In this document: in pieces, positions 3,152 through 31,775 of the stretch | Numbering within the stretch: position 1 is the first letter of the stretch | How the letters are laid out: each line of letters starts with the position of its first letter | Virus record (IMG/VR): IMGVR_UViG_3300029983_000007 | Span: 186,001-250,000 of that record | Strand: one strand, 5' to 3' | Length of the DNA stretch: 64,000 bases | Notes under the pieces: model-generated | Databases searched by the model: none | Seen by the model: the letters and a program-made list of their open reading frames with translations, nothing else | Told to the model about the DNA's origin: nothing | Made by a program: the position numbers and the translations under genes

Positions 3152-4763
3152 AATTAATAAAGTGATTAGGTAATATATTAGAATTATATTTCAATAAATC
3201 AGAAAAATTTGAATCTAATATGAAAGTTTGACAATAATCAGTTTCACTGCGAATTCCGCGGCCAACTTCTTGAATTGTGTTAACACAGGCATTCCAGGCA
3301 TACCATTCAGGCTTAATTTTTTGTCTAGCTTTAATTTTTTTAGAACCAAGATTTGCGAAACTAATTTTTAGCACTATTTGAAAACGAGCTAACTCATCGT
3401 CTAATGAAATTCCTTCCATCATTGATGGACTGACTAAAACTGTTGCAGTTGTGCTTGTTAAATGTTTTTCAAGTATTTCATTTCTATCTTCAGTTGTATG
3501 AAATAATAGTCTTTCGTCCATAATGGTTTCTTTTAACCATTCTGTTATTTCATAATTTGATGTGTGAATTATACCTTTTTTATCTTTATATTTTGCTAAT
3601 ATTTTTTTTATCCATGGTACTTGATTTTTGAATGTCTCTTCTTTACTATAAAAAGACATCTTACCAAGCTTCATATAAAATATTGGATGATTCTTCAATT
3701 CAAACGGAGATTCAACTTCATAATAGCTTGTTAAATCTTCATCCAGTCCATTAATGAAACCAAACATCTTAGGATCCAATATTGTTGCAGACATGAAAAT
3801 TATATGATCATATTTTGACCAAACATATTCATTAAGGTACTCATATACTAATATATGTTCAGTTACCAACTCTATCCCACTATAATTCTTTTCAGTTTTA
3901 GATTTATTGATATCAAGAACTACATTATCAGGATCATTTTTATATGACTCAAATAAATGTTTAAACGCCAACAATTTACTATCAATATTTTGTAAATATT
4001 TAGATAATTCAACTTTCTGTTTTTGTTTTGATGAACCAGCAATATCTGACTCAAATTGTGTTCTTTTTTTCTCTAACATTGGAATTAACTTTCTTTCTAA
4101 AAATTCTAAATATTTGTCTAAAAATTTAATTTTTGATATATATTTACTATCAATTTCATCAATTTCTTTTAAACCAAATCCGCATTTTTTTAATGTTTTT
4201 GAACTTAATTTTGATGATAAGTAGGATGAGAATGTTTCTTCGAAGGATTGACATTCATCAATTATAAGTACATTACCATCTCTTCGTTTTAGTGTTTCTG
4301 TTTGAAATAATGATAATGTGTCAAATAGATGAAAATTTGTTAAGCCAATATCTCCAGATATCCATGAATTTTTTGCAATATCATATGGACATGCATCACA
4401 ATGTTTTTTCATTATTGTACATAATTCTTTAGCTGTACCACAATCGCAATCAAAATCTTTACAATAATAGTTAGATTTGCCCTTGTAATTGTTAATAAAC
4501 GGAAAATCTTTTATGTACTGATCTTGAAGAATCTTAGAACCTGTCAAAACGTCGAATTTTGCATCAGTATTCACAAATCCCCTATACCAATTTGCAAACA
4601 TCATAACAAGAAACGATTTTCCTGTTCCAGTAGGTAAGTTGCTCAATATGAATCTTTTGCCATTAGTTATACTGTCTTTCATGAAGTTTAATGCCTCAAC
4701 TTGATACGTTTTTGGTTCATATTTCAGAGGGAAAAAAACTTTTTTATCGTCTACTTTAATCAT
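3129..4763 (-). CDS. DinG/Rad3-like SF2 DNA helicase
   Basis: Walker A LPTGTGKS, Walker B IIDECQ, SAT, Cys cluster C-x4-C..C..C...CPY, C-terminal QEVGRGIRSETD...ILDS. Confidence 0.85.
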   Translation of the reverse strand: MIKVDDKKVFFPLKYEPKTYQVEALNFMKDSITNGKRFILSNLPTGTGKSFLVMMFANWYRGFVNTDAKFDVLTGSKILQDQYIKDFPFINNYKGKSNYYCKDFDCDCGTAKELCTIMKKHCDACPYDIAKNSWISGDIGLTNFHLFDTLSLFQTETLKRRDGNVLIIDECQSFEETFSSYLSSKLSSKTLKKCGFGLKEIDEIDSKYISKIKFLDKYLEFLERKLIPMLEKKRTQFESDIAGSSKQKQKVELSKYLQNIDSKLLAFKHLFESYKNDPDNVVLDINKSKTEKNYSGIELVTEHILVYEYLNEYVWSKYDHIIFMSATILDPKMFGFINGLDEDLTSYYEVESPFELKNHPIFYMKLGKMSFYSKEETFKNQVPWIKKILAKYKDKKGIIHTSNYEITEWLKETIMDERLLFHTTEDRNEILEKHLTSTTATVLVSPSMMEGISLDDELARFQIVLKISFANLGSKKIKARQKIKPEWYAWNACVNTIQEVGRGIRSETDYCQTFILDSNFSDLLKYNSNILPNHFINSIKVLKV

Positions 4764-4968
4764 TTAAAGATATTTTTATTTAGTATAGGTGATTTCATGA
4801 TAATTGTTTTTGAAACTTTATAATAATTTGTATTTATAATAGCAATGAAAGAACAAAAAAAGCTTATTGATATAAAGTCGAAAAAGAAGTTGATTTCAGT
4901 AACTGAAAAAACATATGTTGGTTTTGATGTTATAGAATTTAAAAGTGGTAAATATTATAAATTGAAAT

Positions 4969-5452
4969 ATGAATGATAATAGATATTATTGTAAAAAAAA
5001 TTATTATAATAACTTCACAAAAGGATGTTATTATGATATTTGGATAGATCATAACAAGGATTCAAGTTATCTAATAAATTGGATAAATAATAATGTTTAT
5101 AATGTAAACACCATCTATGTTATATATGGATCTGAAATGGATAAAAATTTTAATAGCTATTTTATATTAGCTACTATTCATGATAGAAAAATAAAATTAA
5201 AAATATTAAATGAAGACTAAAAAATATTATTGTAAAAAATCATACGATAGCATTACTATAGGTAATTATTATGATTGTGGAACATCAACTAATGATTTAA
5301 TTTATGAAATTTCTGGAAAAAACAAAAAAGGTTTTGACTTTAATATGATATATGACAATAAATCTGATATTTATAAATATTTTAATGATTATTTAATATT
5401 AGCTATTATTCACGACAGAAAAATAAAACTAGAAAAAATTAGGTTATCTTAA
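4969..5452 (+). CDS. two paralogous small proteins with RKxKL-type tail (4969-5220, 5210-5452)
   Basis: Shared YYCKK...G.YYD...Y.ILA.IHDRKIKL. Confidence 0.75.
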
Positions 5453-5494
5453 TTTTTTTCATTATCTTAGTATTACAAAATATTAAATTTAAAA

Positions 5495-8400
5495 ATGGAT
5501 CAAAATATTAAAATAGGTGACAAATTTTTATGTAAAATGAATTATTGTTATATAATATTACAAAAATTTCATGAAGGTGTAGAATATGAAGTATATGATA
5601 TAAAAAAAATAGACAATGGCTGCGGTTTTTATTATTATTCCTATTCAATGATAGATAATGTTGACTTTAAGTTGTTATATGTGATTGAGTATGAATTAAA
5701 TAATATATTTTACTCTGGTAAAGAAATGAGAAAAATTAAATTAGAAAAATTGAATGAAAAATCATAATATTAAAATTGGTGATAAGTTATTATGTAAAGA
5801 TGATTGTTGGATTCCTAATATATGCTATCATAAAGGTAGAGAATATGAAGTATTTGATTTAAATAATTATTCGTACGTAATAATAGATAGAATTAACAAT
5901 GAGAGATTATTTATTGATGAATCAGAATTAAATTTAGTTTTTTATACTAATCAAGAAATGAGAAAAATTAAATTAGAAAAATTAAATGAAAAAATATAAT
6001 CTTAAAATAGGTGACATATTGTTATGTAAAAAAGATTATATTTATAGTAAAATCTCTTTTAGTATAAATAAAAAATATGAAATAATTCAAATTGTTTATA
6101 ACTCGCTTGAAAATAACAATAATTCGGTTTACTATTATGTATATGACGATAATAATAGTAGCATAGAAATTAGAAATGATGAAGATATGAATAGATATTT
6201 TTACACTAACCAAGAAGTCAGAAATATGAAATTAAAAAAAATTTATGAAGAATCAGAATCTTAATATTGGTGATAAATTATTATGTAAAAATTATTTAAA
6301 AACAGAATATTCTAGTTTAATAGAAGGTGATTATTATTTATTAGTTGATTTTGAGATATTTAATCATGAAGAATATTGTGATGTTAATTATACATTTTAT
6401 GATGAATATAATTATGATGATTATGTATATTATATAGATGATAATAATCATCACTCGTTTTCAATATTAGATGAAAAAGATTTATATAAGTATTTTTATA
6501 AAAAAAATGAGATTAGAAATATGAAATTAGAGAAATTAAAAAATGTTTAAGCAGAATCTTAAAATTGGTGATAAGTTGTTATGTAAGATAGATTATTGGA
6601 CAACAAAAATTTATTTTTTTGAAGGTAGAGAATATAATATATGTGACATAGAAATTGATTATGCAGATGAGAATGATTATGCATATTTTATAATGGATGA
6701 GAATAAAAACCGTGTGTTATTTATGATATTAGATGATTTAGATTCTTTTTTTTATACTAAGAAAGAAGTTAGAAATATCAAAATAAAAAAATTGAAAAAT
6801 GCATAATATTAAATTTAAAATAGGAGAAAGAATATTATGTAAATGCATTTTGCATCAAAACTTCGAATATTTTATGTTAAATAAATATTACACAATTTAT
6901 TCAATTGAAGTGTCAACCATAGGTAATTCATATTATCATATGACATTATAAAATAGCGATTTGCAGTCTATTTGTTCAGATGAATCTGTTTATAATTATT
7001 TTTATACTAACCAAGAAGTCAGGAATATGAAATTGAAAAAATTAAATGAAGAATCAAAATCTTAATAAAGGAGATAAAATATTATGTAAGAATGATATAC
7101 ATAATTCAAGAATTAATTTTACAAAAGGAATAGAATATTATATTGTAGCTATAGAACATAAAAATGATAATTATGATGATGATGGTAGTAATTATTACTA
7201 TTATATATCTGATGATAACTCTCAAATAATAGTTAGTGAAAATGAAAGATTATTTTATAATTATTTTTATACTAACCAAGAAGTCAGGAATATGAAATTA
7301 AAAAAAATAAATGATGATAAATAATTTTAAAGTTGGTGATAAGTTATTATGTAAAAAAGATTATATTACAAAATATTCAAGGTATAAAAAAAACAAATAT
7401 TATTATATTGAAGATATTGATGATCCTGTTTATGATTATGAAGAATATTCATATTATATAAATGATGATAATAATAATAATATTTATTTTTGGAAAGAAT
7501 ATGATTTATATGAATATTTTTATACTGCACAAGATGTACGAAAGCTTAAATTGAAAAATCTTTATGAAGAATCTGAATCTTAAAGTTGGTGACAAGTTAT
7601 TATGTAAAACTAACCTTTGTTCTTTGCTAGTTAATTACTTTAATAAGGATAAATATTATATTGTTTGGGATATTAAAAATTTTAAAGATTATTCTCAGAA
7701 TTGGACTTGGACTTGGTATTATATAATTGATGAAAGAGATTGTCCTTATTCTTTTAGTAAAATGGATGATGATTTATATGATATTTTTTATACTAAAAGT
7801 GAAATTAGAAAAATGAAATTGGAAAAATTGAAAAATGAAGAATATTAAAATAGGTGATAGATTATTATGTAAAAAAAGTCTATTTAACTCATCAATGACA
7901 TATTTTTATGCGAGAGAATATTACACTATTAATGAAATTCAATCAGAGAGTGATGGAGAATATTCATATTATATAATTGATAATAATGGCTATACTATGC
8001 CTTTTTCTTTTAATAATAACACTTTATATGCATATTTTTACACTAAACAAGAAATGAGACATATGAAATTAAAAAAAATTTATGAAGAAGCAGAATCTTA
8101 AAATAGGTGATAGATTATTATGTAAAGAAAGTTTTTTTGATTCAGATGATCCATATTTTCATGTAGATGATTATTGTATTATTTATTATATTCAAAAGTA
8201 TGTTACTAATGAATATTATTATTATATTTCAGATGAAAATAATAAACGATATCCTTTTAGATTTAGTCCTGATTTATTATTAACGTATTTTTATACTAAA
8301 CAAGAAATTAGAAATATGAAATTAAAAAAATTAGAAAAATATGAATAATTTTAATGACTATGATAACATATTATGTAAAAAAGATTTAATTGCTAATGGT

Positions 8401-8836
8401 CAGATATGTTTTATAAAAGATGAGTATTACATTTATCGTGAAAATTTAGGTAATGTTATTGATTTGTTTGGATGCTGTATTTATGGTGAAACTAGTGATA
8501 GATACCCATATTATTTAACTAAAAAAGATTTACTGGGTCATTTTTATACTAAAAATGAAATTAGAAAAATTAAATTGAATAAAATTTATGAAGAAGCAGA
8601 ATCTTAACACAGAAGATATATTATTGTGTAAAAAAGACTATTTAATATATTCTGTTGTTGTGTTTCATAAAAATAAATATTATTATAATAGATTTAATAA
8701 ATCTCATGTTTGTTGTACTATATGTGATGATGATTCATTTGAACATTTGCTTAGTTATGACGAGGTATCTGAGCATTTTTACACTAAACAAGAAGTTAGG
8801 AAAATTAAATTGAAAAAATTGAATGAATGTCAGTAA
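5495..8836 (+). repeat. tandem array of 13 paralogous ~81-101 aa genes (12 intact, 1 broken)
   Basis: Starts at 5495, 5754, 5986, 6245, 6543, 6799, 7046, 7311, 7564, 7835, 8082, 8341, 8588; N-terminal (K/N)(I/V)GD(K/R)(L/I)LCK is conserved (degenerate in the last two) and so is C-terminal FY(T/S/K)xxE/DxRxxKLxK[LI]; middles are divergent; successive genes overlap. Confidence 0.9.
6799..7065 (+). pseudogene. array member with an in-frame TAA at 6949-6951
   Basis: MHNIKFKIGERILCK...YYHMTL*NSDLQSICSDESVYNYFYTNQEVRNMKLKKLNEESKS*; both family ends are in one frame. Confidence 0.85.
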
Positions 8837-8957
8837 AGTTTATTTTTATTAATAACTATTAAAAAAATATAACACAAAAAACATTTTTATTTTAACTAAG
8901 TATATATTATATGAATAATAATTTCAATTTAGTTGTAAATAAAAATAATAAAAAATA

Positions 8958-9125
8958 ATGGAATCTGAAAAAGAACCGCTCACAGTATCTGAACAAAATC
9001 ACAGAATTATTTCATTACTGGAAAGTATTAAAGATCAACTCATCATTCTGACTGATGTAGAAAGAAATAAAGATACAAAGAATAGTGTGTTGGAATATAT
9101 TAGAAATAGAAAACAACAATACTAA
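8958..9125 (+). CDS. small hypothetical protein (55 aa)
   Basis: MESEKEPLTVSEQNHRIISLLESIKDQ...; A-rich upstream region, followed by a terminator. Confidence 0.55.
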   Translation: MESEKEPLTVSEQNHRIISLLESIKDQLIILTDVERNKDTKNSVLEYIRNRKQQY

Positions 9126-9156
9126 AAAAGAGAAGGTTAAAGCCTTCTCTTTTTTT
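9124..9156. terminator. intrinsic (probably bidirectional) terminator
   Basis: AAAAAAGAGAAGG-ttaaag-CCTTCTCTTTTTT hairpin with T tract. Confidence 0.8.
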
Positions 9157-9165
9157 GTTGTTTAA

Positions 9166-9197
9166 TTTGGTAGTTTAAAATATTTAGATTACTTTTG
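9166..9197 (+). promoter_or_regulatory. Bacteroidota sigma-A-type promoter for the cas7-cas5-cas6 operon
   Basis: TTTG (9166-9169), 20 nt, TACTTTTG (9190-9197); matches the TTTG-N19-21-TAnnTTTG consensus. Confidence 0.8.
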
Positions 9198-9237
9198 TTG
9201 TTGATAAAAACAATTATAAAAACATTAAAAAAATTAT

Positions 9238-10323
9238 ATGAAAAAAGTAAGAAGCATTTTATTTAAAATGGAATTAAAAGGCAACGGAGTTGTTAATTTT
9301 GATAGTAATGATCAAAAATATCTTTGGAATGAAAATACAAAAGGTACTGGTCAAGAAAGAGTTAATCACAATAATGTCAGCTTTGCTAAAAAACGTTGGT
9401 ATAAAAATGATGACGGTACAATTGATAAAAAATTGATTGTTTCAAGTAACTGTCTTAGGTATTCAATATTTTCTGATGATACTTTATTTCAATCACCAAA
9501 TATAATTAATAATAGTTTTTTACTAAATTCAATGATTGCCACTCCAGGTTTAATTTGTCGTGGATATATGTTTGCAGAAAAAGATCCATCAAAATCATAT
9601 AAACGATCTAGTGTATTGAATATTACAGATGCTGAACAAATAAATAATTCGATATCTACATTAGAAACTTTTAGTCGTAGTGGAGAAAAAATTGTTGATG
9701 AAAACAAATCTGACACAAGTTTCTTCAAAAAAGAAACAGTAGGTAATATTGTATATGAAGCGATAGGTAGTATTGATATGATGCAAATTCAATTTGTTAG
9801 TTGTGATCAACTATTTGATAGGATGGCATTAAATCCAGATATATTTCCAGATTATAAGAAATTTCTTTCTACTAAATTACCAAATTTCAATTCTGAACTT
9901 AGTTATTATCAAATTAAAGGTAGTGCTATTGAACTTCCTGAATATGGTTTTATGTTATCAAATGAAAATGTGATATTTTTAGTAAAGGATTTATTCACTA
10001 AAATGTTAAACTTAAAAATTCGAAAAGCATCTGCATTTGCTGAAGTTTCTTCTATCAAATATAAAATTGTTAATGATCCATTTGAAGATAAATTTAGTGA
10101 TGAAGACGGCTGGTTGGAATTGAATAAAAACGTTATTGAAACATTGAATTTTGATAATGAGGACTTCTATGAGAAATATGATTTTGATGCTGCTAAATCT
10201 TTAAGATTAGAATTAGAAGATGCTGCAAAAGCCAGAAAAGATGCTAATAAAGATGCTGCAAATTTAAAAAAAGAAGAAGCAAAATCTAAAAAAGAAAAAA
10301 AAGTAGAAGAAACTGAAGAATAA
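9238..10323 (+). CDS. cas7: CRISPR-associated Cas7-like backbone protein (divergent)
   Basis: N-terminal strand-G..N, VSSNCLRY (ISxxxlR-like), RGY...KRSS.L.ITDA, then ETFSR...DTSFF..E..G..Y...G.ID, the Cas7 RAMP pattern; first gene of an operon with cas6 beside an array; charged helical C-tail. Confidence 0.75.
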   Translation: MKKVRSILFKMELKGNGVVNFDSNDQKYLWNENTKGTGQERVNHNNVSFAKKRWYKNDDGTIDKKLIVSSNCLRYSIFSDDTLFQSPNIINNSFLLNSMIATPGLICRGYMFAEKDPSKSYKRSSVLNITDAEQINNSISTLETFSRSGEKIVDENKSDTSFFKKETVGNIVYEAIGSIDMMQIQFVSCDQLFDRMALNPDIFPDYKKFLSTKLPNFNSELSYYQIKGSAIELPEYGFMLSNENVIFLVKDLFTKMLNLKIRKASAFAEVSSIKYKIVNDPFEDKFSDEDGWLELNKNVIETLNFDNEDFYEKYDFDAAKSLRLELEDAAKARKDANKDAANLKKEEAKSKKEKKVEETEE

Positions 10324-10334
10324 TAAAAAATAGC

Positions 10335-11210
10335 ATGAAATATTTAAAGTTAAGTTTCAGAAATGCTGGCTTCTATACTGTTAATAAAAATACTAAAGAC
10401 TTTATGTTTGATATAAATGGTCAGCACAAAAGAAAAGATGTATTATATGGTAAACAGCAAAAAGTTAGTATTTCTGTTAATCAGATAAGTAATATGTTAC
10501 ATGTTTTAATGGGCGAAAGACCAAGTGCAACATATCGTGATACTTTAATAAATCCGATAAATTCTATTTTTCAAACTGCTAATAAATCATACATTAAGAT
10601 TTATACCTCATTTTTTATAAATAAAAATAAAAATGTGAAATATTATCCTTCTGAAAGTGTTACTATTAGAAAATCAGTTTGGAATAGTTTTAATCCTGCA
10701 CCAGATTTAGTTTATTGGAAAAGAGTTGAGAATTTTTTAACTAATGATATAGATAATTCATTATATCTTGAATTTGTAAAAATATTAAATTCTATATTAG
10801 AATATGATGTATTAAAAAAAACATTTTTAGATGTTATTGATGAATTGATAAAAAATCATAAAAATCATAGTTTAATTAACACTTTTAAATTAAAACTTAA
10901 AGAATCAATGAAAGTTCCAATGATTAAAATATTGGATGGTGAATATGATGGCACTATGAATAAAAATAGTAGAACAATGTTGACTACTAATTTTGGTGTT
11001 GATAAGATTACTAGATTGAGTGGTTCTATTATAATACCAGTTGAAGAATATGATATTGAAAAAATTAGGAATTCAAAAGGTTCTGTTACTTTATTAGACG
11101 GTGGAGTAGTGTGGATTGAAGATTTGATAAATGATTATGAATTTGGAGTTAGAGAACTTGAAGAATATTTACCTATTAATAAATTAGAAGAATATGAGAA
11201 TAATATTTGA
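10335..11210 (+). CDS. cas5: Cas5-like protein with large central helical insertion
   Basis: N-terminal MKYLKLSFRNAGFY...QISNMLHVLMGERP resembles the Cas5 first strand and 'sal.Gll.ailG' helix; C-terminal LSGSIIIP...VTLLDGG.V.I resembles the Cas5 RRM end; lies between cas7 and cas6. Confidence 0.55.
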   Translation: MKYLKLSFRNAGFYTVNKNTKDFMFDINGQHKRKDVLYGKQQKVSISVNQISNMLHVLMGERPSATYRDTLINPINSIFQTANKSYIKIYTSFFINKNKNVKYYPSESVTIRKSVWNSFNPAPDLVYWKRVENFLTNDIDNSLYLEFVKILNSILEYDVLKKTFLDVIDELIKNHKNHSLINTFKLKLKESMKVPMIKILDGEYDGTMNKNSRTMLTTNFGVDKITRLSGSIIIPVEEYDIEKIRNSKGSVTLLDGGVVWIEDLINDYEFGVRELEEYLPINKLEEYENNI

Positions 11211-11907
11211 ATTTACAGAAAATACATCATTAGTACCAATTAATAATCAGTCATATATGAATTATTATATTCAAAAATGTCTTGGCGACAATAATAAATA
11301 TCATGATTCTAAGAATGATTATTCTATTTCTTCATTATATGGAGGTAAGTTAACAGATGATGAATTACATTTATCTTTCAAAAATGGAGGCATTATTGTT
11401 GTAACTTCAAAAAATGAAGAATTCTTGAATACTTTGATATGTGGTGTGATGTCTAATAAAGAATTAAAATGGGGAATGAAATTTGATAAAATTAATTTCA
11501 TTTCTGAAATTTTTAGAAATGGCTGGAATCATTTTGCTACATTATCTCCTTTTATTATTAAAAAATATATTGATAAAAAGAATTATACCTTTTCAACTTT
11601 GAATGATTCTGATTTTGTAGATACTGTAAAAAAACATATTATAAAAAAATTGAGTAAAATTTATAATGGTATAAATTTAACAGATTTTGATGTTAAAATA
11701 ATCAATCATCCTTCTCATAAAGTAAAAAAAATAATGGTGAAGAATGTTAAAAATGAAGCTAATCAATGTCAAGTCAGTATATTCTGTTCATCAGATGTAG
11801 CAGAAAAAATTTACAATTTAGGTATAGGTCAATCAACTGGTTCAGGATTTGGAACAATTTATAAAACAGAAAATAGAGATAAATATAATTTAGAATTGAA
11901 AAAATGA
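11194..11907 (+). CDS. cas6: CRISPR-associated endoribonuclease Cas6
   Basis: YHD..N.YSIS.L.GG, TLSPFII, C-terminal Gly-rich loop GIGQSTGSGFGTI. Confidence 0.95.
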   Translation: MRIIFEFTENTSLVPINNQSYMNYYIQKCLGDNNKYHDSKNDYSISSLYGGKLTDDELHLSFKNGGIIVVTSKNEEFLNTLICGVMSNKELKWGMKFDKINFISEIFRNGWNHFATLSPFIIKKYIDKKNYTFSTLNDSDFVDTVKKHIIKKLSKIYNGINLTDFDVKIINHPSHKVKKIMVKNVKNEANQCQVSIFCSSDVAEKIYNLGIGQSTGSGFGTIYKTENRDKYNLELKK

Positions 11908-11999
11908 TTAATTTTAATCTAAATGATATTGTTACAAGTGATTTTTTAAATTATAAATCACTTGTAATGTTATGTATATCTGTCAATTATGAATAATGA
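11908..11999 (+). promoter_or_regulatory. CRISPR leader with a 13-bp inverted repeat
   Basis: AT-rich non-coding stretch next to the first perfect repeat; TTACAAGTGATTT (11932-11944) / AAATCACTTGTAA (11955-11967). Confidence 0.65.
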
Positions 12000-13222
12000 A
12001 CTGATACTTATATAATTCCGCAAGGGAATCACAACAATGTGGAATGTAACTGGAATTAATGTTTTACTGATACTTATATAATTCCGCAAGGGAATCACAA
12101 CGAATATGCAGAATATTCAAAAAAGAGAATAACTGATACTTATATAATTCCGCAAGGGAATCACAACACAACAGATAATGGAAATAAATTACAAGTTACT
12201 GATACTTATATAATTCCGCAAGGGAATCACAACTCTAGCAGTGCAATAGAGCCAGCCCAATCAACTGATACTTATATAATTCCGCAAGGGAATCACAACT
12301 ATAAATAACAAAGAACTAATGAAAAACTCACTGATACTTATATAATTCCGCAAGGGAATCACAACTCAGCCTGAATTTTACCTTTACCCATCATTACTGA
12401 TACTTATATAATTCCGCAAGGGAATCACAACTAAAAATAACCATCTAATAATTGAGACATAACTGATACTTATATAATTCCGCAAGGGAATCACAACTGA
12501 TGTGATGATATACAGAAAAAAAAATAACTGATACTTATATAATTCCGCAAGGGAATCACAACATCATTCTATTGATTGTTATATTTCTTCTAACTGATAC
12601 TTATATAATTCCGCAAGGGAATCACAACATCTTTTCTATATAATATATTTTCATATTTACTGATACTTATATAATTCCGCAAGGGAATCACAACATCAAA
12701 AAATGTAATTCTATATTTATAATTACTGATACTTATATAATTCCGCAAGGGAATCACAACATATATTTTCTTTAAACTGCTCAATGATGAACTGATACTT
12801 ATATAATTCCGCAAGGGAATCACAACATTGCGTACGACTCATATAATTCAACACAAACTGATACTTATATAATTCCGCAAGGGAATCACAACAGCCCATA
12901 TGTACACCCTATTTAGTGGTACACTGATACTTATATAATTCCGCAAGGGAATCACAACTGCGCTTGAGTTGTTGAATTTGCTGCAAAAACTGATACTTAT
13001 ATAATTCCGCAAGGGAATCACAACTTTAATGCTTTTGCAAATTTTGGCATAATAACTGATACTTATATAATTCCGCAAGGGAATCACAACATTGCAGTTT
13101 GATACATTTCAAAATAAGAAACTGATACTTATATAATTCCTTGATGGAATCACAATATTGAAAAAATAGAAAAGTTGATACAATAAACTAATAATTATAT
13201 CATTCCGTAAAGGAATTTAAAA
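12000..13222 (+). CRISPR. CRISPR array: 17 identical plus 2 degenerate 36-nt repeats, 18 spacers
   Basis: Repeat ACTGATACTTATATAATTCCGCAAGGGAATCACAAC at 12000, 12066, 12132, 12198, 12264, 12330, 12396, 12462, 12527, 12593, 12659, 12725, 12791, 12857, 12923, 12989, 13055; degenerate copies at 13121 and 13187; spacers all different, 30 nt (one 29 nt); internal hairpin ATTCC-GCAAG-GGAAT. Confidence 0.99.
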
Positions 13223-13234
13223 TATTAAAAATTA

Positions 13235-13266
13235 TTTGTATAATCAAATAAATAATAGTATATTTG
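13235..13266 (+). promoter_or_regulatory. Bacteroidota-type promoter for cas3
   Basis: TTTG (13235-13238), 20 nt, TATATTTG (13259-13266). Confidence 0.8.
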
Positions 13267-13290
13267 CATGTTATAAAAAATTATTAAAAT

Positions 13291-15564
13291 ATGATAGAAA
13301 CATTAGTGTCTAATAGTAATGGAGTATCTTTAAAAACTCACTCGTTAGCTGTTCAAAAAATAGCAGTTATAATGGCTGAAAGATTAGGATTACCAATTGA
13401 TATACAAAATGCTATATCAAAAGCTGCTTTGTTACATGACATTGGAAAATCTTATATTCCTTTTCAAAATTATGTATCAAAAAAAGTTGTATCTGAAGAG
13501 TTTACTAATAATAAAATATTTCATCATGAAATTTCATGGGCTATACTTAGATATCTTATGAATATTGATAAAGATTATAATTATAGTATTTTATATTCTA
13601 TATATTGGCATCATTCCAGAGATATGAGTAATAAAAATAAAGAATATGCATCATCGATATTAGAAAAATTAACAGATGATGATAAACAAAGAGTATTAAC
13701 TGTGTATAATGAATTAACTGGTGAAAATAAAGTTTTATCAGATCTTGATGTTAATATCATGAATGATAAAATTCCTGATTATTATATAAATAAAGATGAT
13801 AAAATTTGTTCATTGAATATTATTGTTATGTCTTGTGTAGTTTCTTCAGATAGATATGTATCATCAATAAATATAGACCAGAATAAAATTTTAATTGATG
13901 ATAATTATTGTAATGAAATTGTTGATTCTATAGATTATTCTCCTACAAAAAATTATATAACACCAAAAAATTATGATATTGATCGTTTTAATTATCAATT
14001 ATCTTGTGCTGGTGATATAAATAGTAATCAAACTTCTGAATTGAAAGCACCTGCTGGTTATGGTAAAACTATTAATGGCTTACTTGCTTGGATTAAATCT
14101 GGGAATAGAAAATTAATTTGGGTTTGTCCAAGAAATACAATAGCGGAAACTCTATTTGATGGTGTTAAAAATGAACTTAATGCATTAAGTATCAATAATA
14201 TTAGTGTTGAATTGTTTCTTACTGGAGAAAGACGTGATATTTATAATGAAAACAATAATATAGATTTCACATCGGATATTATAATCACTAATATTGATAA
14301 TTTTTTGACTCCTACCATTAATAATTTTGTTAGAGATAGAATGTACTCATTATTATCAAGTTATGTTATTTTTGATGAATTTCATGAATTAGTTGCGTCT
14401 GAGCCGTACTTTGCTTGTTTTGTTAATATCATGAATGTTAGACATAGATATACAAATAGTAAAACATTACTGATGAGTGCGACCCCTACAATGATGACAA
14501 ATTTATGGGATAACTCAATTAAAGGAACTGCTATTTTACCAAATGAAACTAATCATTATAATGCTGCTCATTCTAAGAAATTTAGAATAAATTTCTTAGA
14601 TGATATAACTTTAGTAAATCCTCAACTAAATAGTTTATTTATAACAAATTCAATAAAATCTTCTCAAACAAAAACTATTGATGACGATTATTCAGTTATA
14701 GCGCATAGTAAATATATGATTGATGACAGAAAGTGTATAATTGATAGTATATTTGATATGTATGGTAAAAATAAGAAGATTCAAAATAAATTAGATGTTA
14801 TATCTGCGCCATTGATTCAAGCTGCTATGGATTTATCTTTTGGTATTATGACTGAAATTCCTAAATCTCCAGAAGATACATTTCAAAGATTGGGTAGACT
14901 TAATAGATGGGGAGAATATGATGTAGTTGATTATAATATTTTAGTTAATATTAATGATAAAAAAATAAATTTAAGTGAATTAGCTTCAATTAATCTTACT
15001 TATGACATAAAATTAAATAAATTGTGGATTGATTATTTAAAAAATAATATTATTGATAAATATGAATATACATTAGATGAATTGTACATTAAATACAATG
15101 TTTTTAATTCAATGTATAAAAAAGAAATAAATGAATATATTAATGATAGATACATTAAAAGTAGAGAATCATTATCTAAATTATTTCCAAGAAAATATAT
15201 AAATAAAGATACAAAAAAAATAGTATCATCAGGTTCTAAACTTAGGGACAATGGATCAAATAATATTTATTGTATATATAAAATATATAATACTGATGAG
15301 TATACAGATGTATTTAGTATTGATTCTAATGGTTCAGATATGGATAAACATGAAGATAATACTACTCAAACTAATCAGATTCGTTCTATTAAGAAATTGT
15401 TAACTGATAGTAGATTTGAATATAATAAACATAGATTATTAACAGGTAACAAATTTACTAGTAATAAATTATTTGAATCTGCAAAAAATCCTAAGACTCC
15501 ATATATTTGTTACCATAAAGAATATCATCCAAAATTAGGGCTTATATCAATTTATTTATTATAA
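13291..15564 (+). CDS. cas3: CRISPR-associated HD nuclease/SF2 helicase Cas3
   Basis: HD domain: LKTH, ALLHDIGK, HHEIS, WHHS, SSDR; helicase: APAGYGKT, DEFH, SAT, QAAMDLS, QRLGRLNRWG. Confidence 0.95.
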   Translation: MIETLVSNSNGVSLKTHSLAVQKIAVIMAERLGLPIDIQNAISKAALLHDIGKSYIPFQNYVSKKVVSEEFTNNKIFHHEISWAILRYLMNIDKDYNYSILYSIYWHHSRDMSNKNKEYASSILEKLTDDDKQRVLTVYNELTGENKVLSDLDVNIMNDKIPDYYINKDDKICSLNIIVMSCVVSSDRYVSSINIDQNKILIDDNYCNEIVDSIDYSPTKNYITPKNYDIDRFNYQLSCAGDINSNQTSELKAPAGYGKTINGLLAWIKSGNRKLIWVCPRNTIAETLFDGVKNELNALSINNISVELFLTGERRDIYNENNNIDFTSDIIITNIDNFLTPTINNFVRDRMYSLLSSYVIFDEFHELVASEPYFACFVNIMNVRHRYTNSKTLLMSATPTMMTNLWDNSIKGTAILPNETNHYNAAHSKKFRINFLDDITLVNPQLNSLFITNSIKSSQTKTIDDDYSVIAHSKYMIDDRKCIIDSIFDMYGKNKKIQNKLDVISAPLIQAAMDLSFGIMTEIPKSPEDTFQRLGRLNRWGEYDVVDYNILVNINDKKINLSELASINLTYDIKLNKLWIDYLKNNIIDKYEYTLDELYIKYNVFNSMYKKEINEYINDRYIKSRESLSKLFPRKYINKDTKKIVSSGSKLRDNGSNNIYCIYKIYNTDEYTDVFSIDSNGSDMDKHEDNTTQTNQIRSIKKLLTDSRFEYNKHRLLTGNKFTSNKLFESAKNPKTPYICYHKEYHPKLGLISIYLL

Positions 15565-15636
15565 TTTGATTAATACAATTATTACCCTCATCTTTGTACA
15601 CAATATTTTTAATAACTCACACTAAATAGTAAAATT

Positions 15637-15873
15637 ATGGGTAAAACACATAAAACATTAGTAAAAGCTAGTTATTTTTTAGAAAGAAAACTGGTAAAAT
15701 ACATTTCAAATCCAATAGTATATATTGAAGAAGATGGTATTAATGAGAAGAGTTTAAAGATACATTTAGATAATCCAAGCACAAGTTTAATTCATAATAT
15801 TAATGAATGTGCGAATGAGACATATTTAAGATTTGGAATTAAGACAGTAATAAGAAAATACATAACTAATTAA
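15637..15873 (+). CDS. small hypothetical protein
   Basis: 78 aa; own promoter-like TTTG(15565)-N20-CATCTTTG and a downstream terminator. Confidence 0.6.
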   Translation: MGKTHKTLVKASYFLERKLVKYISNPIVYIEEDGINEKSLKIHLDNPSTSLIHNINECANETYLRFGIKTVIRKYITN

Positions 15874-15905
15874 AAAAGAGAAGAGTTAAATCTTCTCTTT
15901 TTTTT
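15872..15905. terminator. intrinsic terminator closing the cas3/ORF78 region
   Basis: AAAAAAGAGAAGA-gttaaa-TCTTCTCTTTTTT. Confidence 0.8.
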
Positions 15906-15956
15906 GTTTGTGTCAAATATTATCCTTACATTTGTAAATAATTTTAAATAAATATC

Positions 15957-17921
15957 ATGACAAAAAGTAATAATATCAATAATGTTAAACATCCCATTAT
16001 TAGAACAAAAAGTTTACGTAATGGTTCTGTAACAAAAAACAACAAGTCATATATAAGAACATATGATTTAAGTCGTTATAGTAATGATCAGTTAGTGAAT
16101 GCATTATATAGCAAAAAGTGGAACACAAACAGAAGAAGATTTATTGCTGATATATACTATTTATTAGATGAAAGGATTGCAGCAGGAAAATGTACTAAAT
16201 ATGAAATTGACAATTTGAAATATTTAGCTAATATAAAAAAGCATAATATAGTAAAATCTGTCAATAATAATAGTAGAACAACTACCACAAATACTACAAT
16301 TCCAGTCTCTAATAGTTTAGTTAGTTTAAAATATCGTATCAATAGTTTATCAAATGAAATATTTCGTATTACTGGTGCTAGATTTAAAAAGCTAAACAGG
16401 ACTGATGATGTATCAGATAAAGCACATGTATTTTATGATCAGATTTTTGCTTCATTACATTGTATACATAATATGTTGATGGCAAAAGATAATTATAAAC
16501 ATAGTAGATATAATATGTTAACTGCAGAAACTCAAGCAGGAAAAACAGGAGTTGTTCGTAATGTAATATTTTTATTGGAAACTTATCCTAAATTGAGAGA
16601 ATATCTTGGTTTAGAATTTGGAGGTAGCGTAATAATAACTCCAATGTGTGACAATGCAAATAAAGAACAATTAAAAACTGATATTTCACATGGCGAATGC
16701 AGACAAGACAATCAAAAACTTTTAAAGTCAAAAGGAATCATGCATAATCCAGATATGCTTAGTTGGTCAAGAAATAATCAATATGGAAACTTGCATGACT
16801 GTATTATATTTGTAGATGAATCTCACTTAGCATCAGGTGTTAGTGGTGCTATGAATAGTTATCTTCAAAAAAATAATATAAATTTGAATGGCTCTACTAA
16901 TTTATCTAAAAATAACATTTTTTTATTCACAATATCAGCTACTCCATATGAAGAGCATGTTGGTAATTTGTTATTTAAAAAAAAGAATACAATAGAGTTA
17001 GCTCATGGACCTAATTATAAAGGATTGGATTATTTTTTGAAAAACAATTTTTTTAGACAATCATTTGATTTGTCAACTACTGAAGGTGAGAATCATTTTA
17101 AGAATGAAGTAGAAAGTTTCAATCATAAAATTGGTTATTATATTGTCAGAATAAATATTAGTACAGATACTGATAATTTGATACCAGAAGGATTTTCAAC
17201 TTTAACATATTTTGAGAAAGATAAAGAAGTTATTAATGAAACATTGAGAAAAATACCTGATACACCTACTCTTATATTTGTAAAAGAGAAAATGAAACAA
17301 TCATATCAATTAGATAAACAAAATATTGTAATGATGTTTGATAGATCAGTTGTTCATGATTCTGATTATAGAACAAGTTTTATTGTACAAAGTTTTGCAG
17401 GTAGATTTTGTGGATATCATAATTATAATGCTATTATATACACAGAAATAAATGATGTGAAACTTCATTTAGATTATTTAAAAAATAAAAATCATGTACC
17501 ACACTGTAAGCGTGTTAATAATGATAAGAAATTTTCATTCAAGGAAAAAAATAAATCACAGCAGTCATCATATAGTAATAAAAATGACTTATCATATGCA
17601 AATAACTTTACATTAAAGATTGGATATAAAACACAGAATGATGGTTATATAACATTAAACAATAATATCATAACAATATATTTAGATAATAAGAGGAATT
17701 TAGTATTATCTAAAAAATCAAAAGTTGAAACAGAATTTCTTTCTTCTTATATTGAAGACTATGTTGTTTGCTCAGATATTAAAACACCTTGTAATTCATT
17801 TTTAGATGCTAAGAATGCACTTGAATCGTATTGTAAGATAGTATCATCAAAAACAAAAATTGATGATGTGAAAACAAAAAATGGTAAAAAATTCATTGAA
17901 TTATTGGAGTTTAATTTTTGA
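15957..17921 (+). CDS. SF2 helicase-like ATPase (DExH), reminiscent of Z1-domain/restriction-associated helicases
   Basis: AETQAGKTG, IFVDESH, ISATP, QSFAGRFCGY; basic N-terminal extension; promoter TTTG(15903)-N20-TACATTTG. Confidence 0.65.
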   Translation: MTKSNNINNVKHPIIRTKSLRNGSVTKNNKSYIRTYDLSRYSNDQLVNALYSKKWNTNRRRFIADIYYLLDERIAAGKCTKYEIDNLKYLANIKKHNIVKSVNNNSRTTTTNTTIPVSNSLVSLKYRINSLSNEIFRITGARFKKLNRTDDVSDKAHVFYDQIFASLHCIHNMLMAKDNYKHSRYNMLTAETQAGKTGVVRNVIFLLETYPKLREYLGLEFGGSVIITPMCDNANKEQLKTDISHGECRQDNQKLLKSKGIMHNPDMLSWSRNNQYGNLHDCIIFVDESHLASGVSGAMNSYLQKNNINLNGSTNLSKNNIFLFTISATPYEEHVGNLLFKKKNTIELAHGPNYKGLDYFLKNNFFRQSFDLSTTEGENHFKNEVESFNHKIGYYIVRINISTDTDNLIPEGFSTLTYFEKDKEVINETLRKIPDTPTLIFVKEKMKQSYQLDKQNIVMMFDRSVVHDSDYRTSFIVQSFAGRFCGYHNYNAIIYTEINDVKLHLDYLKNKNHVPHCKRVNNDKKFSFKEKNKSQQSSYSNKNDLSYANNFTLKIGYKTQNDGYITLNNNIITIYLDNKRNLVLSKKSKVETEFLSSYIEDYVVCSDIKTPCNSFLDAKNALESYCKIVSSKTKIDDVKTKNGKKFIELLEFNF

Positions 17922-20842: not shown

Positions 20843-22015
20843 TTATAGGTTAAATTTACTTGTATTTATTAAATAATCAAATTCTTTCTCTATTTTAGGA
20901 TTTAAAATGTCTTTAATATATTTTAAATTATCTATGTTGTCATCTAATATTGTTTTCTGATAGTCATATGATTTTAATATACTAATATCCATATGTCTTA
21001 ATTTTGATATGATAGATGGATATTGTTTCATTTTATTAATCCAAAAATCCTCATTGTAATTAGTTATGAATTCAGTAGTGAATGAATTTTCATATTTACC
21101 ATCATAATTACTTATAATCCAATATGCTAATTCTAAATACTTTGTACTTAAAATTTTACCATTTCTATAATACTTAAAAGGTAATCCTTGTATTATAGAA
21201 TAACCTTTATCTTTTACTTTATCAAGTATAACTCTTACAAATCTATCTAATTTTTCACTTATCATTAATGAAATCAAGTTATCTAATCTATATTGATATT
21301 TATCTTCTGAATGTGTAGCATATGAAGAAAATGAATAATCTTCCTCAATATTTTTAGAGTTAACTAAAAATGATACCGCATCTAAATTACCTTTATGAAT
21401 AACATTATAAATATGCCTATATGTTACTGGTACTCCTAAATTGATTAGATATTTTATAACATCAGGTTTGTCGTTGTATTTTGTTGCATAATCTATACAA
21501 TTTTCTGGTGCTCGTGAAAATGTAGCATCTTTCTTTTTATTCGGATCTAATCCTGTGCTAATTAAAAACTTAACAATATCTAATTTTCCTTTAAAACAAG
21601 CAGTCATTAATAAATCTTGATTGAAAGTTACTCCTAAATCTTTTAATAATTTGAATTTTTTGACATCTGAATTATGGTATACAAGATTATTTAAAAATTC
21701 TGGTTCTTTAATTAATGCTTTATAAATATTATCATTTTTTAATATAGATTTGAAATAAATATAAGGTAGTTCACAAACTGCTGTGTTATTTTTTGAAAAT
21801 TTTTTTGCTGGTACATAATCAACTAATTTGACTGCTAATTCTGGAAGCTCTCTACAAGCAAAATAGAATAATCTATCTTCTTCGTATTCTGTTATATTCT
21901 TTGTGTTGATAATATTTATATAATGATTAACATCAATAATAGATTTAAAATCTTCATAAAAGCTATAAAATACTGGCTTTGTCTTTTTCTCATATATTTT
22001 AAAATTTGTTATCAT
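20843..22015 (-). CDS. ankyrin-repeat protein with KFNL tail
   Basis: LMTACFKGKLDIVKFLISTGLDPN, CIDYA...VIKYLINLG, IHKGNLDAVSFLV; likely start MITNFKIYE at 22015; ends TSKFNL. Confidence 0.7.
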   Translation of the reverse strand: MITNFKIYEKKTKPVFYSFYEDFKSIIDVNHYINIINTKNITEYEEDRLFYFACRELPELAVKLVDYVPAKKFSKNNTAVCELPYIYFKSILKNDNIYKALIKEPEFLNNLVYHNSDVKKFKLLKDLGVTFNQDLLMTACFKGKLDIVKFLISTGLDPNKKKDATFSRAPENCIDYATKYNDKPDVIKYLINLGVPVTYRHIYNVIHKGNLDAVSFLVNSKNIEEDYSFSSYATHSEDKYQYRLDNLISLMISEKLDRFVRVILDKVKDKGYSIIQGLPFKYYRNGKILSTKYLELAYWIISNYDGKYENSFTTEFITNYNEDFWINKMKQYPSIISKLRHMDISILKSYDYQKTILDDNIDNLKYIKDILNPKIEKEFDYLINTSKFNL

Positions 22016-22037
22016 ATCATTATATATAAAAAACAAT

Positions 22038-31584: not shown

Positions 31585-31598
31585 CAACACAATGTCAC

Positions 31599-31683: not shown

Positions 31684-31693
31684 CAAATTATAT

Positions 31694-31766: not shown

Positions 31767-31775
31767 CAAATACAT

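What the first reader, a model, noticed from the sequence alone, without database searches (positions are those of the whole stretch)
9166..15564. Phage-encoded minimal type I CRISPR-Cas system with no large subunit (Cas7-Cas5*-Cas6-array-Cas3)
Seen: a promoter-driven cas7/cas5-like/cas6 operon, a clean 19-repeat array and a cas3 with its own promoter and intact HD and helicase motifs, bounded by terminators and sitting in a jumbo-phage context. No ORF between the terminators at 9124 and 15872 has the size or features of Cas8, and there is no cas1/2/4. Established: canonical type I Cascades need Cas8 for PAM reading and Cas3 recruitment; the known exception, I-F2 (I-Fv), uses a Cas2-3 fusion and Cas6f. 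Here Cas6 is of the I-B/III-like kind (GIGQSTGSGFG) and Cas3 is stand-alone, with the array placed between the two modules. Inference: a compact Cas8-less variant (about 6.3 kb including the array) that may be undescribed and is probably used against competing phages or MGEs.
Basis: partly seen in the sequence, partly recalled or inferred. Interest (0 to 1): 0.93.

Follow-up and report, generated by a model that had tools for sequence, protein, structure and literature searches.

The report
Jumbo-phage Cas8-less type I CRISPR-Cas
A 330-kb phage carries a complete four-gene CRISPR weapon (Cas7, Cas5, Cas6, Cas3 and an 18-spacer array) that lacks the usual large subunit; it is a deep, previously unnamed relative of the rare I-F2 subtype, and two of its spacers match the tail tape-measure gene of another phage.

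Summary
Between two hairpin terminators lie cas7, a 291-aa gene, cas6, a 19-repeat array (17 identical repeats plus 2 degenerate ones) and a stand-alone cas3. All HD and helicase motifs of Cas3 are intact. The window lies in a 330-kb IMG/VR viral contig.

The system is not unrelated to I-F2. Cas7 and Cas3 match only the I-F2 proteins among solved structures. A high-confidence model of the 291-aa protein matches strongly only Cas5fv, the subunit that replaces Cas8 in I-F2.

It still fails most I-F2 membership tests:
- Cas7 scores below the equivalog cut-off.
- The Cas5 has no sequence similarity to Cas5fv.
- Cas6 is Cas6b-like, not Cas6f.
- Cas3 lacks the Cas2 domain.
- No cas1/2/4 was found, the repeat is 36 nt, and the protospacer flanks are not CC.

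The same four-gene set recurs in 14 IMG/VR contigs, several metagenome contigs and three MAG contigs. The Cas5 family has 502 clusters at 50% identity.

Spacers 6 and 16 match one tape-measure gene in three small viral contigs, which supports inter-phage warfare. Arrays are identical across assemblies, so no ongoing adaptation is visible.

Verdict: a new variant of a known kind, of moderately high interest.

The parts
9124..9155 (.). Bidirectional hairpin terminator that closes the upstream gene run and opens the CRISPR-Cas unit
   Evidence: 13-14 bp stem followed by a T run on both strands. It is 85% identical to the terminator at 15872 (D5).
9166..9197 (+). Bacteroidota-type promoter-like motif (TTTG-N-TAnnTTTG), 41 nt before the cas7 start
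   Evidence: There are 8 matches in the window against 4.8 expected, so the evidence is positional: three of them sit just upstream of cas7, cas3 and the next gene. Promoter function is inferred.
9238..10323 (+). cas7 (361 aa), a Cas7fv-like backbone subunit with a K/E-rich C-terminal tail
   Evidence: NCBIfam Cas7fv 9e-31, 107 bits, below the 200-bit cut-off. PADLOC Cas7fv 7e-24. The only credible PDB hits are 5o6u_C and 9g44_F. Precomputed Pfam PF28157 Cas7fv-like. Translation.
10335..11210 (+). cas5 (291 aa): RAMP core with a helical insert at about residues 128-210; proposed 5'-handle cap and PAM reader that stands in for Cas8
   Evidence: No Pfam, NCBIfam, PADLOC or PDB sequence hit. AF2 model has pLDDT 92.6. 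The only Foldseek hits at E<=0.001 are 9g44_B (8e-6) and 5o6u_F (2e-5), both Cas5fv. Weaker hits are Cas5e, Cas5d and other RAMP proteins.
11194..11907 (+). cas6 (237 aa), a Cas6b/TIGR01877-type repeat endoribonuclease; overlaps cas5 by 17 nt
   Evidence: TIGR01877 8e-21, above its cut-off. PADLOC Cas6b 1e-35. Pfam Cas_Cas6_C. PDB 5yi6. G-rich loop visible.
11908..11999 (+). AT-rich leader between cas6 and the first repeat, with no terminator; holds a 13-bp perfect inverted repeat at 11932-11967
   Evidence: The inverted repeat is not conserved in relatives.
12000..13223 (+). CRISPR array: 19 repeats of 36 nt (17 identical, the last two degenerate) and 18 spacers of 30 nt; each repeat folds into a 5-bp hairpin followed by CACAAC
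   Evidence: Hairpin MFE is -4.6 kcal/mol. Across 10 family repeats, 92% of stem cells are paired. No Rfam CRISPR-DR match.
12366..12395 (+). Spacer 6: 28/30 match to a tape-measure gene in three other viral contigs
   Evidence: L041, L042, L043. Target gene identified.
13025..13054 (+). Spacer 16: 24/30 match, same gene and same strand, 153 nt from the spacer-6 site
   Evidence: Mismatches fall at positions 12, 18, 24, 26, 27 and 29.
13235..13266 (+). Second Bacteroidota-type promoter-like motif, 25 nt before the cas3 start, next to the degenerate end of the array
   Evidence: Function is inferred.
13291..15564 (+). cas3 (757 aa): stand-alone HD nuclease plus SF2 helicase, with no Cas2 domain
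   Evidence: PADLOC Cas3fv 1.3e-61. The only PDB hit is 9g44_A at 9e-39. Invariant H17, H49-D50, H78, H107-H108, D187, GxGKT 256-260, DExH 362-365, SAT 396-398 and QxxGRxxR 532-539. Canonical I-F2 Cas2-3 carries about 105 extra N-terminal residues.
15637..15873 (+). 78-aa ORF inside the cas3 transcription unit; function unknown and not conserved in relatives
   Evidence: no family hit and no tblastn hit in relatives.
15872..15903 (.). Bidirectional hairpin terminator that closes the unit

Best explanation
This is a functional, self-contained type I interference module carried by a jumbo phage. It is a deep sister lineage of subtype I-F2.

Shown:
- The gene set, the array, intact catalytic motifs and conservation of the four-gene set across many loci.
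- Specific homology of Cas7 and Cas3 to the I-F2 proteins.
- Cas5fv as the nearest fold for the 291-aa protein.
- Two spacers matching another phage's tape-measure gene.

Inferred mechanism:
- cas7-cas5-cas6 and the array are transcribed from the promoter-like site at 9166, with no terminator before the array.
- Cas6 cuts each 36-nt repeat at the 3' side of the ATTCC-N5-GGAAT hairpin. This gives crRNAs with a handle of about 8 nt ending in CACAAC, a 30-nt guide and a 3' hairpin.
- Cas5 caps the handle and about six Cas7 coat the guide.
- The helical insert of Cas5 reads the PAM (tentatively 5'-TTCN) and opens the duplex, doing the job of Cas8 as Cas5fv does.
- The Cas7/Cas5 surface recruits Cas3, which nicks and shreds the displaced strand.

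The phage uses this against co-infecting phages. New spacers are not being added now. Past acquisition must have used an adaptation machinery encoded elsewhere.
For: Anatomy and significance.

Cas7 is Cas7fv-like.

Cas3 is I-F2-like with all motifs intact.

Cas5 fold: the models have pLDDT 79.8 and 92.6. Both give Cas5fv chains as the top two hits and the only ones at E<=0.001. Chain identity was checked.

No Cas8-sized partner: the 654-aa neighbour and the 88-aa paralogs are absent from L011, L012 and L013, so they are phage synteny and not system parts.

The same four genes occur in at least 10 diverged loci with unrelated flanks. These include a bacterial chromosome and 14 IMG/VR contigs of 66-362 kb.

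I-F2 works without Cas8: Cas5 reads the PAM and Cas7/Cas5 recruit Cas3 (PMC12956352, PMC4937334).

Targets: spacer 6 at 28/30 and spacer 16 at 24/30 lie in one tape-measure gene, on the same strand, 153 nt apart. The other 15 spacers tested reach at most 22/30 on those loci.

No adaptation: there is no cas1/2/4 in the loci or in the tested window ORFs, no Cas2 domain, and arrays are identical in all assemblies of each phage.
Against: - There is no expression, processing or interference data.
- The Cas5 assignment rests on a predicted structure. TM-scores are only 0.33-0.36, and there is no sequence signal to Cas5fv.
- Only 64 kb of the 330-kb genome was inspected, so cas1/2/4 or an accessory subunit could lie elsewhere.
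- Only 2 of 18 spacers have a target, and both targets are imperfect copies.
- The spacer-6 hit came from a pattern that allowed mismatches only at every sixth position. The mismatches at multiples of six are also third codon positions, so they do not prove Cascade-type pairing.
- The PAM rests on two flanks.
- The promoter motif is not enriched overall (8 found against 4.8 expected).
Confidence: 0.75

Rival explanations
1. It is simply an ordinary member of the already classified subtype I-F2 (I-Fv) that lost its adaptation genes on a phage. In that case nothing here is new beyond the host.
For: The best family matches are Cas7fv and Cas3fv. The only PDB relatives are I-F2 chains. Most relatives keep the I-F2 gene order cas3-cas7-cas5-cas6.
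Against: - Cas7 scores 107 bits against an equivalog cut-off of 200 and is 27-30% identical to real Cas7fv.
- The Cas5 HMM scores about 3 bits on real Cas5fv, and hhalign gives probability 0.3.
- Cas6 is not Cas6f.
- Cas3 lacks the Cas2 domain in all 10 members.
- The repeat is 36 nt rather than 28 nt.
- Branches of about 3 substitutions per site separate the family from plasmid I-F2 in the Cas7 and Cas3 trees.
Confidence: 0.12
2. The module is incomplete. It borrows a large subunit (for example Cas8b) and other parts from a host type I-B system, which the Cas6b-type nuclease would fit.
For: Cas6 is of the I-B/III kind. Many phage CRISPR loci lack parts and may use host proteins (PMC7162821). 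Most of the phage genome and the host were not inspected.
Against: - Cas7 and Cas3 are not I-B-like.
- I-F2 shows that this core needs no Cas8.
- The same four-gene set is kept in unrelated genomes, including a Verrucomicrobiota chromosome where the Cas6 is Cas6e-like.
- The 21-nt repeat core was found in metagenome contigs only next to this family's own genes or in bare arrays, never in a host-type locus.
Confidence: 0.07
3. The main job is counter-defence against the host (as in ICP1, which targets a host island) or host gene control, and not phage-phage competition.
For: 16 of 18 spacers have no known target. ICP1 sets the precedent (PMC10161043). The phage invests in counter-defence, since it carries an Acb3 homolog.
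Against: The only two identified targets lie in a structural gene of a tailed phage. No spacer hit was found in plasmid or phage isolate collections. No host genome was available to test.
Confidence: 0.2
4. It is a decaying or non-cleaving remnant, or a binding-only silencer.
For: There are no adaptation genes, arrays are frozen across samples, and two terminal repeats are degenerate. Some relatives have arrays with decayed repeat loops.
Against: - 17 repeats are perfectly identical.
- All HD and helicase motifs are invariant over sequences as little as 22-50% identical.
- All four ORFs are intact in many diverged copies.
Confidence: 0.05

Closest known systems
Type I-F2 (I-Fv) CRISPR-Cas of Shewanella putrefaciens CN-32 and of plasmid loci in Acinetobacter and Legionella (PDB 5O6U, 9G44)
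   Same: - No Cas8 and no Cas11.
- Homologous Cas7 backbone and homologous Cas3 helicase-nuclease.
- A Cas5 with a helical insert as the nearest fold.
- Most relatives share the order cas3-cas7-cas5-cas6-array.
   Different: - The Cas5 is unrecognisable by sequence and is shorter (291 aa against about 337).
- Cas6 is Cas6b-type, not Cas6f.
- Cas3 has no Cas2 domain (757 aa against 982-994).
- There is no cas1.
- The repeat is 36 nt and the spacers are 30 nt.
- Protospacer flanks read TTCN, not CC.
- It is borne by a jumbo phage, and here the array sits between cas6 and cas3.
- Total interference proteins come to 1,646 aa, against 1,840 aa in the Acinetobacter plasmid locus.
Vibrio phage ICP1 type I-F1 system
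   Same: A phage-encoded type I system with Cas3-dependent DNA destruction, used in a conflict between mobile elements (PMC10161043).
   Different: ICP1 keeps Csy1 (Cas8f), Cas1 and a Cas2/3 fusion, adapts on its own, and targets a host satellite. It sits on a phage of ordinary genome size.
Adaptation-less CRISPR loci of huge phages (Al-Shayeb et al. 2020, PMC7162821)
   Same: A huge-phage setting, no Cas1/2/4, and spacers against other phages.
   Different: The type I example described there is an I-C variant without Cas6 that carries a different helicase in place of Cas3. No Cas7fv-like system is mentioned.
Type I-B systems (Cas6b, Cas8b, Cas7b, Cas5b)
   Same: The Cas6 family, a long repeat of about 36 nt, and an 8-nt handle ending in AAC.
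   Different: No Cas8b is present, and Cas7 and Cas3 are of the I-F2 kind.

Membership tests
Type I CRISPR-Cas | Cas3 with an HD nuclease and an SF2 helicase | tested here: met
   TIGR01596 scores above its cut-off. HD, DEAD and Cas3 C-terminal Pfam domains are present. All catalytic motifs are invariant.
Type I CRISPR-Cas | Multi-subunit effector genes (Cas7, Cas5, Cas6) next to a CRISPR array | tested here: met
Subtype I-F2 (I-Fv) | No large (Cas8) or small (Cas11) subunit gene | tested here: met
   None is present in the terminator-bounded unit, in the tested window ORFs, or in 10 related loci. The rest of the 330-kb genome was not examined.
Subtype I-F2 (I-Fv) | Cas7fv at equivalog level | tested here: not met
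   NF040577 scores 107 bits against a 200-bit cut-off. Identity to annotated Cas7fv is 27-30%. The protein is homologous but lies outside the equivalog.
Subtype I-F2 (I-Fv) | Cas5fv by sequence | tested here: not met
   No NCBIfam or PADLOC hit. hhalign against two Cas5fv gives probability 0.3. A 162-member HMM scores about 3 bits on Cas5fv.
Subtype I-F2 (I-Fv) | Cas5 fold with a helical PAM-reading insert | tested here: inconclusive
   Cas5fv chains are the only strong Foldseek hits (probability 1.00, E 8e-6 and 2e-5). TM-scores are only 0.33-0.36. A helical block at residues 128-210 is predicted. Its equivalence to the AH domain is inferred.
Subtype I-F2 (I-Fv) | Cas6f (Csy4) nuclease with a 28-nt I-F repeat | tested here: not met
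   The Cas6 matches TIGR01877 and Cas6b models, with no Cas6f hit. The repeat is 36 nt.
Subtype I-F2 (I-Fv) | Cas2-Cas3 fusion and cas1f | tested here: not met
   The first HD histidine is at residue 17, against 121-123 in plasmid I-F2 Cas2-3. No cas1 was found in the locus or window.
Subtype I-F2 (I-Fv) | GG (CC) PAM | tested here: inconclusive
   Two protospacer 5' flanks read TTCT and TTCA. This is n=2 on diverged targets.
Subtype I-B | Cas8b large subunit with Cas7b and Cas5b | tested here: not met
   No Cas8b hit. Cas7 matches Cas7fv, not Cas7b.
Type IV | Csf1-type subunit with DinG or another accessory, and no Cas3 | tested here: not met
   An HD-bearing Cas3 is present, and there are no Csf or DinG matches.
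Phage-borne, adaptation-less CRISPR-Cas | On a viral genome, without cas1/cas2/cas4 | tested here: met
   IMG/VR contig of 330,208 bp with phage genes. No adaptation genes in the 64-kb window. The remaining 266 kb were not tested.

The most novel reading that the evidence does not exclude
These loci form a new subtype-level lineage of Cas8-less type I systems, carried mainly by jumbo phages. They would be the smallest Cas3-dependent interference machine known (four proteins, 1,646 aa).

In this reading, a portable Cas3-Cas7-Cas5 core is re-paired with whichever Cas6 and repeat family is locally useful: Cas6f in I-F2, Cas6b-like here, Cas6e-like in a Verrucomicrobiota chromosome. Its arrays could then be filled in trans by a resident adaptation machinery.

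The PAM-reading helical insert of its Cas5 either diverged beyond recognition from Cas5fv or arose separately.
Probability: 0.3. Interest if true: 0.8.

Novelty: new variant of a known kind. Interest (0 to 1): 0.62.

Why it matters
Breadth of the Cas8-less design. Until now the Cas8-less type I design was known from a single narrow subtype, I-F2. This finding suggests it is a broad, old and mobile architecture. The Cas5 family alone has 502 clusters at 50% identity and matched no model in the Pfam, NCBIfam or PADLOC copies searched here, so annotation based on these libraries would leave the Cas5 unannotated.

A natural experiment. The locus tests which parts of a Cascade can be exchanged (Cas6 and the repeat) and which travel together (Cas7, Cas5, Cas3).

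Biology. It is a concrete case of a jumbo phage aiming a DNA-shredding system at a structural gene of another phage.

Practical use. A four-gene, 1,646-aa Cas3 system with a non-CC PAM would add to the compact long-range deletion tools already being built from I-Fv (PMC12714560).

Tried and rejected
- **654-aa ORF downstream (15957-17921) as a hidden large subunit.** Rejected. It has no family hit. It is conserved only in the syntenic phage L008 and is absent next to the system in L011, L012 and L013.
- **Tandem 88-aa paralogs upstream as system parts or as targets.** Rejected. They are absent from other loci. The partial spacer matches to them (24/30 and 22/30) are no better than those of shuffled spacers.
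- **Self-targeting or cross-targeting between the related CRISPR-bearing phages.** None was found in the loci held.
- **Protospacers in isolate phages and plasmids.** Only chance-level hits.
- **Exact scans of IMG/VR with spacers 4, 13, 14 and 15.** These returned only the array itself.
- **Sequence link between the 291-aa family and Cas5fv.** None by phmmer, by profile against PDB, by hhalign or by HMM.
- **Sigma-70 promoter scan.** No better than shuffles.
- **Rfam.** No CRISPR-DR family matches the repeat.
- **Similar DNA or Cas7 in GenBank phages.** None.
- **Literature.** No paper found couples I-F2/I-Fv with huge or jumbo phages, or describes this gene set. Makarova et al. 2025 mention only a variant intermediate between I-F1 and I-F2.
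- **Host arrays sharing the repeat.** The one metagenome scan found only this family's own loci.
- **Repeat hairpin covariation.** Weak: one compensatory pair, and 55 of 500 shuffles score as high.

Full report
**What is in the sequence**

Four co-oriented ORFs occupy the stated coordinates:
- cas7: 9238-10323, 361 aa
- a 291-aa gene: 10335-11210
- cas6: 11194-11907, 237 aa
- cas3: 13291-15564, 757 aa

Between cas6 and cas3 lies a CRISPR array with a 66-nt period. A 20-nt repeat core occurs 17 times against none in shuffles. The full 36-nt repeat is identical in 17 copies. Two degenerate copies follow at 13121-13156 and 13187-13223 and still keep the hairpin. That gives 19 repeats and 18 spacers of 30 nt (one of 29).

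The degenerate copies lie at the cas3 end, so the leader is the 92-nt stretch after cas6 and the array reads on the + strand.

Hairpin terminators at 9124-9155 and 15872-15903 bound the unit. They are 85% identical to each other.

A sigma-70 scan says nothing in this 23% GC DNA. The Bacteroidota-type motif TTTG-N19-TAnnTTTG sits at three telling places: 9166-9197 just after the first terminator and before cas7, 13235-13266 before cas3, and 15903-15934 just after the second terminator. The overall count is not significant (8 against 4.8 expected), so the evidence is positional. That this consensus is the Bacteroidota promoter is my own knowledge.

**Genomic setting**

The window is part of IMGVR_UViG_3300029983_000007, a 330,208-bp viral contig. 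The same locus is on a 326-kb JGI contig and on others. The window also encodes the following:
- a gp32-type SSB
- a phage helicase
- an HNH homing endonuclease
- an Acb3 anti-CBASS homolog
- ankyrin-repeat proteins
- four tRNA-Gln genes
- many small ORFs without family matches

No GenBank phage has similar DNA or a similar Cas7.

**The proteins**

*Cas7.* It matches the NCBIfam Cas7fv model at 9e-31, but at 107 bits against a 200-bit cut-off. It also matches PADLOC Cas7fv. In the PDB, its only credible hits are the Cas7 chains of the two I-F2 Cascade structures, 5O6U and 9G44. A newer Pfam family, PF28157 Cas7fv-like, is precomputed for it. So its kinship has been noticed at the family level.

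*Cas3.* Its best match is PADLOC Cas3fv at 1.3e-61. The I-F2 Cas3 of 9G44 is its only PDB relative at E<=0.001. An alignment with nine relatives and two plasmid I-F2 Cas2-3 proteins keeps every HD residue and helicase motifs I, II, III and VI invariant. The first HD histidine is at residue 17 here and at 4-32 in relatives, against 121-123 in real Cas2-3. The Cas2 domain is therefore missing in the whole family.

*Cas6.* It is an ordinary Cas6 of the TIGR01877/Cas6b kind with the G-rich loop. It is not Cas6f.

*The 291-aa protein.* This is the crux. It has no hit in Pfam, NCBIfam, PADLOC or PDB sequences, alone or as a profile.
- An AlphaFold model from 27 homologs had pLDDT 79.8. One from 150 homologs had pLDDT 92.6 and pTM 0.80.
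- Both models gave the same answer in Foldseek against the PDB. The only hits at E<=0.001 are 9g44_B and 5o6u_F (probability 1.00; E 8e-6 and 2e-5 with the better model). Cas5e, Cas5d, I-B Cas5 and other RAMP proteins follow far behind.
- A real Cas5fv from an Acinetobacter plasmid identifies those chains as Cas5fv.
- The model has a RAMP core interrupted by a helical block at about residues 128-210. This is the layout that lets Cas5fv read the PAM in place of Cas8 (PMC12956352).

Two caveats apply. TM-scores are only 0.33-0.36. There is also no sequence signal: hhalign gives probability 0.3, and a 162-member HMM scores about 3 bits on Cas5fv. No Cas8 structure appears among the hits, so the protein is not a Cas8 fragment.

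**Is a large subunit hiding nearby?**

The 654-aa ORF just past the second terminator, and the run of about 88-aa paralogs upstream, are shared only with the syntenic phage L008. They are absent from L011, L012 and L013. They belong to the phage backbone and not to the system.

**The family**

The 291-aa protein has 30 close homologs. A profile search found 502 representatives at 50% identity, 206 of them below 1e-30. Those that carry a source name are called hypothetical.

The four-gene set recurs in these places:
- a related jumbo phage, L008 and eight IMG/VR contigs
- other viral contigs of 66-362 kb: L032, L034, L035 and L037
- metagenome contigs L016 and L021
- a 92-kb contig
- Bacteroidota MAG scaffolds L011 and L012
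- a Terrimicrobiaceae chromosome, L013

In L013 the same Cas3-Cas7-Cas5 core is joined to a Cas6e-like nuclease and a GC-rich 32-nt repeat.

Most loci read cas3-cas7-cas5-cas6-array, as I-F2 does. Only the window, L008 and L011 have the array between cas6 and cas3. None of the flanks inspected holds cas1, cas2, cas4 or cas8.

In Cas7 and Cas3 trees the family is separated from plasmid I-F2 by about 3 substitutions per site.

**Mosaic history**

L008 shares flanking genes at 70-88% identity and Cas6 at 86%. Its Cas7, Cas5 and Cas3 are only 54%, 41% and 44% identical. In the Cas3 tree the window pairs with L011, whose flanks are unrelated. The interference core and the Cas6 have different histories.

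**The repeat**

The repeat folds into a 5-bp stem (ATTCC/GGAAT) with a 5-nt loop, followed by CACAAC. Across ten family repeats, 92% of stem cells pair, with one compensatory change and four G-U pairs. This is only weak covariation. In L021, L017 and L023 the loops vary freely while the stem and the tail stay fixed. No Rfam CRISPR-DR family matches.

**Targets**

Searches that found nothing meaningful:
- Isolate phage and plasmid collections gave only chance-level hits.
- Partial self or cross matches are no better than those of shuffled spacers.
- Exact IMG/VR scans with four spacers returned only the array.

Spacer 6 did find targets. It hit three other viral contigs (10-36 kb, 31-32% GC) at 28/30. 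BLAST of all spacers on those loci then showed spacer 16 at 24/30 on the same strand, 153 nt away. Every other spacer stays at 22/30 or below.

Both sites lie in a gene that matches tape-measure proteins: PHROG hit at 1.5e-34, and tblastn hits to 1,045 phage records.

Mismatches fall at positions 6 and 18 for spacer 6, and at 12, 18, 24, 26, 27 and 29 for spacer 16. The sixth-position pattern was imposed by my search for spacer 6. Those positions are also third codon positions, so the pattern is only suggestive.

The 5' flanks read TTCT and TTCA. That points to a tentative 5'-TTCN PAM, unlike the CC of I-F2 (n=2).

**Adaptation**

The arrays of this phage and of the L008-type phage are each identical in every assembly that holds them. 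No spacer turnover is visible.

**Comparison with the known**

The closest system is I-F2. It has the same Cas8-less principle, a homologous Cas7 and Cas3, and the nearest Cas5 fold. The locus still fails most membership tests for I-F2: the Cas7 equivalog score, Cas5fv sequence, Cas6f, the Cas2-3 fusion, cas1f and repeat length.

None of the papers I could search describes it. Al-Shayeb et al. 2020 report an I-C variant in huge phages. Makarova et al. 2025 list only a variant intermediate between I-F1 and I-F2. I could not read Al-Shayeb et al. 2022 (Cell), which surveyed phage-encoded systems, so prior mention there cannot be excluded.

**Verdict**

It is a new variant of a known kind, possibly at subtype level. 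There is direct sequence evidence for inter-phage targeting. Its function has not been tested.

Noticed in passing
window 22038-22799 (-): Homolog of the phage anti-CBASS protein Acb3 (Pfam PF25187, 1e-47). An ankyrin-repeat protein lies next to it at 20843-22036.
   Followed up: partly
window 7311-8836 (+), probably from about 4970: A run of overlapping paralogous genes of about 88 aa with no family match. The related phage L008 has 15 copies at the same place, upstream of its CRISPR-Cas locus. Other loci with the system lack them.
   Followed up: partly
window 28137-29000 (+): An IS4/IS5-family DDE transposase in a locally GC-richer stretch (0.30 against 0.23). It looks like an insertion sequence inside the phage genome.
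   Followed up: no
window 31514-31848 (+): Four tandem tRNA-Gln genes (three with anticodon TTG, one with CTG). One is unusually long at 86 nt.
   Followed up: no
window 9124-9155 and 15872-15903; 9166-9197, 13235-13266, 15903-15934: The two bidirectional terminators are near-copies of one sequence. Each is followed at once by a TTTG-N19-TAnnTTTG motif, which hints at a Bacteroidota host and a standard terminator-promoter cassette in this phage.
   Followed up: partly
window 11932-11967: A perfect 13-bp inverted repeat in the CRISPR leader. It is not conserved in L008 or L011.
   Followed up: partly
L008 compared with window 3129-17921: Mosaic divergence. Flanking genes and Cas6 are 70-88% identical, but Cas7, Cas5 and Cas3 are only 41-54%. 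The window's Cas3 pairs with L011 instead.
   Followed up: partly
L013 6482-12147: A Terrimicrobiaceae chromosome carries the same Cas3-Cas7-Cas5 core with a Cas6e-like nuclease and a 10-repeat GC-rich array. It lies beside PD-T4-5-like and SduA-like genes.
   Followed up: partly
L021 5346-6497, L017, L023: Arrays whose repeats keep the stem and the 3' tail but have freely varying loops. Spacers are shared, reordered and duplicated between contigs.
   Followed up: partly
metadata: The same Cas7, Cas5 and Cas3 proteins are recorded on a contig of 711,471 bp, more than twice the IMG/VR contig. This could be a larger genome, a concatemer or a misassembly.
   Followed up: no
L042 640-3429: In the targeted phage, the tape-measure region is split into several ORFs (640-1422, 1678-2895, 2926-3429). 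Possible causes are frameshifts, assembly errors or an alternative genetic code.
   Followed up: no
window 1853-3151 (+): An HNH/homing endonuclease gene containing a 192-nt tandem repeat (2267-2768).
   Followed up: no
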